From contig NC_068995.1 of NCBI RefSeq assembly GCF_001194135.2, positions 32,835,436-32,888,905 of the forward strand: DNA of 53,470 nt, in the 5' to 3' direction. Shown here piece after piece: positions 2,604-3,570 of this stretch. Source of the DNA: Octopus bimaculoides. Taxonomy: Eukaryota. Each line of letters starts with the position of its first letter. The stretch's first letter is position 1. A program made the position numbers and the translations under genes. The notes below the pieces were generated by a model, which saw only the letters and a program-made list of their open reading frames with translations, did no database searches and was not told the origin of the DNA.

Positions 2604-3570
2604 CTGTATTGAAACCATTTGTGGGGAACTTTTTTTTATCACAGAAATTGGTCACACACCACAAGATTTGACAGAACCTGTGGCGAGAGCTGGGTTTGTC
2701 AGTTCCTGTTACAGTGGAGGATAGATGGAAACAGAGAATATGGGACAATCTGCACTCAGGTGCCACTTTCAACTCTCTCCTTGATCAATGTGATCAATTT
2801 TCAAGGTGTCACCTACTCTCAGCTCGTGAAAAATTCTTGGGGGACTGGATTGATGCTCTGCCTGTGGCCAACATTGGAGGCCTGCTCAGTCTAGATGAAC
2901 TCCGCATCTTCATCCCACTCAGAATTGGGGGCTGACGTCTGTAGGAGAATGAGATGCCACTGTGGTAGAGCCCTCGACCCCACAAATCTTCACAATCTGT
3001 TTTGCTGTCTAAATGCCAGTTGCTTTGCTTGTCACACCGAGCTAAACCTAATCGTTAAGTGGGCTCTGGCTTGGATTAATATCCCTTCAGTTCTGGAGCC
3101 CTTGGGGTTATCTAGAAGTGATGGAAAGAGACCAAATAGTCTTACCGTCTGTCTCAGGGTTAAAGGTATGTGCCTCATTTGGGACATCACAATCTGTGAC
3201 TCCTTTGCTCTCTCCCACATCCTGGATGCTGCAGTTAATGGGGGGGGGGTCACTGCTTCTGTAGTTGAATGGAAGAAAGCTCTAAAGTATTAGAACTTGA
3301 TAGGGAACTATTTCTTCCAACCTATGGTGTTTAAGATGTTTGGAGGGACTGGGCCACTAACCGTGAAGTTCTTGTCAACGTTGGAGCTTGCTTCACTGAG
3401 GTGTCAGGTGGTGGCCTTGAGGGCGCTTGGTTTTCCCAATGCCCTAGCCTCACCATCACCCATGGTAATGGTGTGAGTGTACTGGCTTGCTTCAGTAGGT
3501 TCCATCGAACCTTGTGGTGTGCAACCAGTTGCTGTGATAAAAAAATTCTCCACAAATGGTTTCAATACAG
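2604..3570. mobile_element. Non-autonomous TIR element (probably Tc1/mariner-pogo type, TA target site) about 970 bp long
   Basis: 2603-2679 (actgtattgaaaccatttgtgggga...cacaccacaagatttgacagaacct) is the reverse complement of 3497-3571 at roughly 80% identity. The right flank is TA (3571-3572); the left flank is AA (one mismatch). Confidence 0.7.
2715..3490 (+). pseudogene. C-terminal zinc-knuckle + restriction-like endonuclease region of a CRE-clade (RLE-type) non-LTR retrotransposon, frameshifted
   Basis: Successive frames give KQRIWD...DWIDALPVANIG...LRIG / VCRRMRCHCG...HNLFC...HTELN...ALAWINIPSVLEPLGLSRSDGKRPNSLT...LIWDITICD...EWKKALKY / ITHGNGVSVL. These match the remembered CRE pattern LEPxGLxRxDGKRPDG...WDxT...KxxKY...RGNAxSVL. 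Confidence 0.75.

What the first reader, a model, noticed from the sequence alone, without database searches (positions are those of the whole stretch)
2604..3570. DNA-transposon TIRs packaging the nuclease domain of a CRE-clade retrotransposon
Seen: ~76-bp inverted repeats (2603-2679 / 3497-3571) with a TA-type flank enclose almost nothing except the zinc-knuckle + restriction-like endonuclease end of a non-LTR element (DGKRP motif). The terminal motif ITHGNGVSVL abuts the right TIR with no stop, 3' UTR, tail or TSD. Established: CRE elements are early-branching RLE retrotransposons, often site-specific, and TIR elements can capture cargo (Pack-type). Inference: this is a class II vehicle carrying a class I PD-(D/E)xK nuclease module. 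If a family with an intact ORF exists, it would be an unusual nuclease-carrying TIR element. This copy is frameshifted and dead.
Basis: partly seen in the sequence, partly recalled or inferred. Interest (0 to 1): 0.72.

Follow-up and report, generated by a model that had tools for sequence, protein, structure and literature searches.

The report
Dead LINE copy with inverted tail stub
The inverted repeats are real, but at least their inner half is the retrotransposon's own tail (last codons, former stop codon, start of the 3' UTR), so this is most likely a decayed, 5'-truncated LINE copy with an inverted stub of its own tail, not a DNA transposon carrying a nuclease.

Summary
The inverted repeat is real: arms 2603-2679 and 3497-3571 match at 66 of 77 positions (BLAST E about 1e-19). 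The 817 bp between them is the broken C-terminal end of a LINE protein with a restriction-like endonuclease (RLE). Relatives carry a reverse transcriptase domain upstream. A model of a relative matches only R2 retrotransposon proteins in the PDB.

The "DNA-transposon vehicle" reading is not supported.
- A longer Octopus vulgaris copy (L002) aligns without a break 35 nt into the right arm.
- That stretch holds the last three codons, the stop codon (TGA in two O. vulgaris copies, CGA here) and the descending strand of a hairpin shared with L002.
- L002 has no left arm.
- There is no TA or other adjacent target-site duplication.
- No second copy of the arm was found in the window, in the fetched loci or in the protein and contig collections.

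Most likely this is a head-to-head LINE product: a 77-nt inverted tail stub fused to a 5'-truncated copy. The cause would be double priming or template switching during reverse transcription.

The origin of the outer 42 nt of each arm is unresolved. It could be LINE 3' UTR or a pre-existing palindrome or MITE. No genome-wide census was possible. The CRE-clade assignment was not tested. Interest is low.

The parts
2603..2679 (-). Left arm. It is an inverted copy of the sequence at 3497-3571. Its inner 35 nt (2645-2679) is the reverse complement of the LINE's ORF end, stop and hairpin strand. The origin of its outer 42 nt (2603-2644) is unresolved.
   Evidence: The reverse complement of 2646-2679 matches L002 6881-6914 at 94%.
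2680..3496 (+). 5'-truncated body of an RLE-type LINE ORF (linker, CCHC zinc knuckle, RLE), read in three frame pieces. Frameshifts lie near 2922-2932 and 3365-3386, and a premature TAG at 3291-3293. Retroelement homology starts by 2681, directly after the arm.
   Evidence: It is 74% identical in DNA to L002 over window 2699-3531 in a single alignment.
2955..3047 (+). CCHC-type zinc-knuckle region (CHCG...H..FCC...CH).
   Evidence: The family alignment has near-invariant C162, H165, C167, C170, H180 and C184.
3120..3290 (+). RLE core motifs: DGKRPN (3120-3137), IWDIT (3177-3191) and VEWKKALKY (3264-3290).
   Evidence: The fold of relative P0002 matches R2 proteins only.
3497..3571 (+). Right arm. 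It holds the last three codons, the former stop codon (CGA 3506-3508, which is TGA in L002 and L001) and 3' UTR. L002 homology ends at 3531.
3481..3529 (+). Predicted RNA hairpin spanning the ORF end, stop and UTR, shared with L002. It has 18 pairs, none broken, and 1-2 compensatory changes. The inner boundary of the inverted repeat (3497) cuts it at the apical stem.
3576..3735 (-). Copy of a SINE-like repeat found at least 7 times in the window. Its end abuts the right arm, with only ATAT between them.
1708..2460 (+). Context only: a 3'-truncated fragment of a different LINE (..IVNCYKGKGD), not part of the element.

Best explanation
This is a fossil insertion of an RLE-type (R2-group) LINE in what is probably an octopus genome. 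It consists of an about 890-nt, 5'-truncated copy (2680-3571) joined head-to-head to a 77-nt inverted stub of the same element's 3' terminus (2603-2679).

Shown:
- The two arms are inverted copies of each other.
- The right arm is contiguous with the ORF, and its first 35 nt contain the ORF end, the former stop codon and the start of the 3' UTR.
- The left arm abuts the 5' truncation point with at most 2 nt of overlap.

Inferred:
- The stub arose during retrotransposition. One route is that both nicked target strands primed reverse transcription on the 3' end of LINE RNA and the two cDNAs were then joined. Another is that the reverse transcriptase, after stopping at 2680, jumped onto a short abortive minus-strand cDNA and copied it. 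A less tidy route is two successive insertions in opposite orientation.
- The arms have since diverged about 12%. Five of the eight inner differences lie at three decayed CpGs.

No transposase is involved and nothing was 'packaged'.
For: - One BLASTN alignment joins window 2699-3531 to L002 6099-6915 and runs 35 nt into the right arm.
- L002's ORF stops at AGG TTC TGT TGA inside that stretch, and P0001 in L001 stops at the homologous TGA.
- L002 has no inverted copy within 6 kb upstream.
- A hairpin at 3481-3529 is shared with L002 and straddles the arm boundary.
- Retroelement homology starts at 2681, immediately after the arm.
- There is no TSD.
- No other arm copy turned up: none in the window, none among 5.8 billion proteins searched with a six-frame translation of both arms, and no exact 22-mer in the metagenome or viral contigs.
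- The cargo belongs to an RT-linked family: at least 935 proteins, many with PF00078.
- Its fold matches R2 proteins only at E <= 0.001, and the RT sequence of a relative is closest to Bombyx R2.
- There is a precedent for an inverted 5'-truncated copy lying next to a retroelement and forming flanking inverted repeats, in Penelope-like elements (PMC8557442).
Against: - L002 stops resembling the window at 3531. The outer 42 nt of each arm is therefore not shown to be LINE sequence. It could be a lineage-specific 3' UTR or something else.
- Only one outside copy (L002) defines the tail.
- The paper read states that complex inverted structures are not observed in TPRT of non-LTR elements, so this would be an unusual product.
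- Classical L1 twin priming inverts an upstream segment; it does not duplicate the 3' end.
Confidence: 0.55

Rival explanations
1. A pre-existing palindrome of about 84 bp, possibly a MITE made only of two 42-nt TIRs (2603-2644 and 3532-3571), was hit at its centre by the LINE. The LINE RNA ends right after the hairpin (..CCAGTTG, 3531). Because the target is symmetrical, both strands were nicked and both primed on LINE RNA. That left a 35-nt stub on the left and an 852-nt copy on the right.
For: - L002 homology ends exactly at the inner/outer boundary, 3531.
- The outer parts of the arms are more alike (1-2 differences in 40) than the inner parts (8 in 35; Fisher p about 0.01).
- In another species a LINE of the same superfamily sits exactly between the flush inner ends of an older 2.1-kb inverted repeat (L005).
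Against: - The inner/outer difference largely disappears once three decayed CpGs are set aside, leaving 3/35 against 1-2/40.
- No TSD flanks the supposed MITE.
- No other copy of the 42-nt arm was found anywhere that could be searched.
- It needs more coincidences than the best explanation.
Confidence: 0.2
2. This is the first reader's reading: a non-autonomous class II TIR element (Pack-type) that captured the RLE end of a LINE and is moved by a transposase that recognises the 77-bp TIRs.
For: - The terminal inverted repeats are flush and 77 bp long, and they enclose a gene fragment.
- Capture of fragments by TIR elements is established for Pack-MULEs and similar elements (own knowledge).
Against: - The inner 35 nt of the 'TIR' is the cargo's own ORF end, stop and UTR. 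It is collinear with a copy in another species that lacks the other arm.
- There is no TA or other TSD.
- The termini (ACTGTA..TACAGT) match no superfamily signature that I know (own knowledge).
- No second copy was found.
Confidence: 0.08
3. An ordinary 5'-truncated LINE insertion was later modified at the DNA level. An inverted duplication of its last 77 bp was created by replication template switching or fold-back repair of a break at the 5' junction.
For: - The structure alone cannot separate an RT-mediated origin from a DNA-repair origin.
- The small palindrome AGGTTC....GAACCT at the inner boundary could seed a fold-back.
Against: - The duplicated segment ends exactly at the same terminal nucleotide as the right arm. 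That is expected if both ends are RNA 3' ends and is a coincidence for a random DNA-level duplication.
- The left arm sits exactly at the 5' truncation point.
Confidence: 0.1

Closest known systems
R2-group LINEs with a restriction-like endonuclease (R2, and the R4, NeSL, HERO and CRE clades)
   Same: - One ORF with RT followed by a linker, a CCHC knuckle and a C-terminal PD-(D/E)xK-type nuclease.
- The fold of a relative matches Bombyx, zebra finch and turtle R2 proteins, and the RT is closest to Bombyx R2.
- The copy is 5'-truncated.
   Different: - The clade was not determined.
- No sign of a specific target was found: this copy lies next to a SINE end, and the relatives lie at unrelated loci.
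- Pfam has no model for the C-terminal region.
L1 5' inversions by twin priming (Ostertag and Kazazian 2001; own knowledge)
   Same: An inverted segment at the 5' side of a truncated LINE insertion, explained by the second target strand priming on the RNA.
   Different: In twin priming the inverted piece comes from further upstream in the same RNA, so no terminal inverted repeat results. Here the inverted piece duplicates the extreme 3' end.
Inverted 5'-truncated copies next to Penelope-like elements (PMC8557442)
   Same: An inverted, 5'-truncated copy lies immediately at the 5' end, so that inverted repeats flank the unit.
   Different: - PLEs use a GIY-YIG nuclease and a different RT lineage.
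- The paper says such structures are not observed in non-LTR TPRT.
- Here there is a single locus only.
Pack-type TIR elements and MITEs
   Same: Short terminal inverted repeats around non-transposase content.
   Different: - No TSD and no family were found.
- The TIR is partly made of the cargo's own end.

Membership tests
RLE-type (R2-group) non-LTR retrotransposon | The C-terminal domain is fused downstream of a reverse transcriptase in one ORF | tested here: met
   Relatives P0010 and P0011, among others, carry PF00078 N-terminal to the homologous region. The window copy is truncated before the RT.
RLE-type (R2-group) non-LTR retrotransposon | CCHC zinc knuckle followed by a PD-(D/E)xK restriction-like nuclease fold | tested here: met
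   Cys/His, E215, D244, E271 and K274 are near-invariant. The AF2 model (pLDDT 83) has seven PDB matches at E <= 0.001, all of them R2 proteins, with query-normalised TM-scores of 0.50-0.57. This was tested on relative P0002, which is 37% identical to the window copy.
RLE-type (R2-group) non-LTR retrotransposon | 5' truncation with an intact 3' end | tested here: met
   Homology starts at 2681 inside the ORF and runs through the stop position into the UTR.
CRE clade | Placement of the RT within the CRE clade in a phylogeny with reference elements | not tested
   No reference RT sequences were on hand. Only the clade scheme was read (PMC4640811).
CRE clade | Site-specific insertion (spliced-leader genes in the founding members) | tested here: inconclusive
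   This copy lies next to a SINE end, and the relatives lie in unrelated contexts. There are too few independent copies to judge.
Pack-type / non-autonomous TIR DNA transposon | Terminal inverted repeats | tested here: met
   77/75-nt arms with 66/77 matches.
Pack-type / non-autonomous TIR DNA transposon | Target-site duplication of fixed length directly flanking the TIRs | tested here: not met
   The flanks are GTTAAA| and |ATATTG. The only direct repeat is an 8-mer, TTCAAAAT, lying 12 and 8 nt away from the arms.
Pack-type / non-autonomous TIR DNA transposon | TIRs belong to the vehicle and are independent of the captured fragment | tested here: not met
   The inner 35 nt of the right arm is collinear with the LINE ORF end, stop and UTR in L002.
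Pack-type / non-autonomous TIR DNA transposon | Several copies with the same TIRs at different loci, and an autonomous partner | not testable with these tools
The proxies found nothing.
L1-type twin-priming inversion | The inverted 5' segment derives from a part of the RNA upstream of the direct segment | tested here: not met
   The inverted segment duplicates the last 77 nt, which are also present in the direct segment.

The most novel reading that the evidence does not exclude
RLE-type LINEs can start reverse transcription from both strands of a target at once. This would give head-to-head insertions whose two ends are both LINE tails, the arrangement so far described for Penelope-like elements. 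Such products, or LINE hits at palindrome centres as in L005, could be a source of new TIR-like structures that a transposase might later adopt.
Probability: 0.12. Interest if true: 0.55.

Novelty: new member of a known kind. Interest (0 to 1): 0.24.

Why it matters
As it stands, this is a repeat-annotation matter. A structure that looks like a cargo-carrying DNA transposon is better read as a decayed LINE copy with an inverted stub of its own tail. TIR finders will miscall loci of this kind.

It would matter more if tail stubs recur in this LINE family. That would give sequence evidence for double priming or template jumping by an RLE-type LINE, a step of integration that is still debated for R2-like elements.

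Tried and rejected
Searches and tools that gave nothing:
- An exact look-up of the window ORF 2895-3293 found no record.
- Pfam found nothing on the cargo or on the upstream fragment.
- A PDB sequence search with P0002 gave only a chance hit.
- A six-frame translation of both arms, used as a protein query, gave no hit at E <= 10.
- The exact 22-mer of the arm tip had 0 matches in the metagenome and viral contigs.
- The 3' UTRs of L001 and L002 show no alignable homology, so the LINE's true 3' end could not be fixed.

Ideas considered and dropped:
- Flanking inverted repeats as a general habit of the family. Only the window and L005 have them among 7 independent loci. L004's is low-complexity AT repeat, scoring 48 inverted against 36 direct.
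- Two different source elements for the two arms, because the left arm is 94% like L002. The differences sit at inferred CpGs that decayed to TG in one arm and to CA in the other.
- The upstream RT-like fragment (1708-2460) as part of the same element. It has no tblastx similarity to L002.

Full report
**Observation**

The arms 2603-2679 and 3497-3571 align at 66 of 77 positions. They differ by 9 substitutions (8 transitions) and a 2-nt indel in a T run, and the BLASTN E-value is about 1e-19. The first 22 nt are identical in both arms and occur nowhere else in the 53-kb window, against 0 expected.

The 817 nt between the arms translate in three frame pieces to the C-terminal part of a retroelement protein:
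- CHCG...H..FCC...CH at 2955-3047
- DGKRPN at 3120-3137
- IWDIT at 3177-3191
- VEWKKALKY at 3264-3290
- frameshifts near 2922-2932 and 3365-3386
- a premature TAG at 3291-3293

Two details of the observation fail.
- The flanks are ..GTTAAA|ACTGT and ACAGT|ATATTG, so there is no TA and no other adjacent duplication.
- ITHGNGVSVL (3455-3484) does not abut the arm. Four more codons follow it, and the ORF continues into the arm.

**What the cargo is**

Pfam has no model for it. The best protein matches are two Octopus vulgaris hypothetical proteins, at 56-58% identity, so the window is probably from an octopus. I did not verify the source.

A more distant intact relative, P0002, has at least 935 homologues at E <= 1e-5. 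Many of them carry PF00078 (RVT_1) N-terminal to the homologous region. The family alignment shows near-invariant Cys/His positions, E215, D244, E271 and K274.

An AlphaFold2 model of P0002 (pLDDT 83) gives seven PDB matches at E <= 0.001. All seven are R2 retrotransposon proteins from Bombyx, zebra finch and a turtle, with query-normalised TM-scores of 0.50-0.57. The RT part of relative P0011 matches Bombyx R2 at the sequence level, E 4.5e-6.

The cargo is therefore the linker, CCHC and RLE end of an R2-group LINE. The literature divides RLE elements into the CRE, R2, R4, NeSL and HERO clades by RT phylogeny (PMC4640811). I had no reference sequences, so the 'CRE' label remains untested.

**Why the arms are not a separate vehicle**

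The locus around the O. vulgaris protein P0003 (L002) holds a longer, decayed copy with RT remnants upstream. One BLASTN alignment joins window 2699-3531 to L002 6099-6915 at 74% identity. It crosses the arm boundary at 3497 without a break and runs 35 nt into the right arm.

In L002 that stretch reads AGG TTC TGT TGA, which is the end of the ORF and its stop codon. The window has AGG TTC CAT CGA. The intact O. vulgaris ORF P0001 (L001) also ends AGG TGC TGA at the homologous place. So the stop codon and the first 23 or so nt of the 3' UTR lie inside the 'TIR', and the stop has since mutated in this copy.

A predicted hairpin (window 3481-3529) is shared by the window and L002. It has 18 pairs, none broken, and one clear and one ambiguous compensatory change. 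Its 5' half lies outside the repeat and its 3' half inside, so the arm boundary cuts through a retroelement feature. With only two sequences this is suggestive, not proof.

L002 has no inverted copy of this sequence in the 6 kb upstream. On the left side of the window element, retroelement homology begins at 2681, immediately after the arm ends at 2679.

**Most likely origin**

The structure is a 77-nt inverted copy of the element's 3' terminus, fused head-to-head to a 5'-truncated copy that ends in the same terminus. Both outer ends stop at the same nucleotide. That is what two cDNAs started at the RNA 3' end would give.

The simplest origins are RT-mediated:
- Both nicked strands prime on LINE RNA and the two cDNAs are joined.
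- The RT jumps from the RNA at 2680 onto a short abortive minus-strand cDNA. Written out, this produces exactly the observed order.
- Two insertions occur in opposite orientation.

These steps are inferred, not shown. L1 twin priming (own knowledge) is related but inverts an upstream segment. The closest described arrangement is the inverted 5'-truncated copy found next to Penelope-like elements. The same paper says such structures are not observed in TPRT of non-LTR elements (PMC8557442).

**What remains open**

L002 stops resembling the window at 3531. The outer 42 nt of each arm (2603-2644 and 3532-3571) is therefore not shown to be LINE sequence. It may be a lineage-specific 3' UTR. It may instead be a pre-existing palindrome or MITE of about 84 bp that the LINE hit at its centre.

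The inner parts of the arms differ more (8 of 35) than the outer parts (1-2 of 40; Fisher p about 0.01). However, five of the eight inner differences sit at three inferred CpGs that decayed to TG in one arm and CA in the other. That removes most of the contrast. It also explains why the left arm looks 94% like L002. I therefore dropped the idea that the two arms came from different source elements. The 3' UTRs of L001 and L002 are not alignable with each other, so the family's true 3' end could not be fixed.

**Search for a family**

The proxies found nothing:
- no second arm in the window or in the fetched loci
- no protein in the 5.8-billion collection matching any frame of either arm at E <= 10
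- no exact 22-mer in the metagenome or viral contigs
- no record of the window ORF

This is weak evidence against an abundant TIR family, because the source genome may simply not be in those collections.

**Context**

The right arm is followed, after ATAT, by the end of a SINE-like repeat (3576-3735, minus strand) that has at least 7 copies in the window. Upstream, 1708-2460 is a 3'-truncated fragment of an unrelated LINE.

**Verdict**

The identification of the cargo is right. The class II vehicle is not supported. The clade is untested.

My probabilities are:
- 0.55: a dead RLE-LINE copy with an inverted stub of its own tail
- 0.20: a LINE insertion at the centre of a small palindrome or MITE
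- 0.10: a later DNA-level inverted duplication
- 0.08: a true Pack-type element

One BLASTN of the outer arm against the source genome would settle it.

Noticed in passing
L005 4671-6828 / 8984-10602 (and its duplicate L006): In another species (ENA ERZ25069810), an intact 611-aa, 5'-truncated copy of the same LINE superfamily lies exactly between the flush inner ends of a diverged 2.1-kb inverted repeat (77-89% identity). The arms look older than the insert, which suggests an insertion at a palindrome centre.
   Followed up: partly
window 2583-2590 and 3580-3587: The 8-mer TTCAAAAT occurs as a direct repeat 12 nt left and 8 nt right of the arms. I roughly estimate a 1-3% chance of this by accident. 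It could be the TSD of a slightly larger insertion with extra junction nucleotides. The right copy lies within the SINE end.
   Followed up: partly
window 3576-3735 (-), also 10544-10762, 17905-18045, 26390-26521, 26872-26977, 28505-28586, 42990-43076: A SINE-like repeat family with many copies in the window. Rfam did not call the copies within window 1-12000 (3576-3735, 10544-10762) as tRNA at E <= 0.1.
   Followed up: partly
window 3556-3564 and 3576-3584: TGGTTTCAA occurs both in the tip of the right arm and, 20 nt later, in the SINE end. This may be chance or microhomology at the insertion site.
   Followed up: no
window 6783-6856 (+): A tRNA-Lys (CTT) gene, found by Rfam at 64.8 bits and by ARAGORN.
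   Followed up: no
window 1708-2460 (+): A 3'-truncated fragment of another LINE (..WWWNNAVDKAIRAKK....IVNCYKGKGD). It ends abruptly in a GAT repeat, which is unusual because LINE copies are normally truncated at the 5' end.
   Followed up: partly
window 5089-6171, 7927-8994, 21675-22847: Stretches that are open in several frames on both strands, probably low-complexity or tandem repeats. The window also holds 2577 N.
   Followed up: no
L002 6040-6120: A local tandem duplication of about 60 nt inside the O. vulgaris LINE copy (TCAGTTCTTGAAACAGCT.AGAACAGATGGAAGCAGAGAGGATGG appears twice).
   Followed up: no
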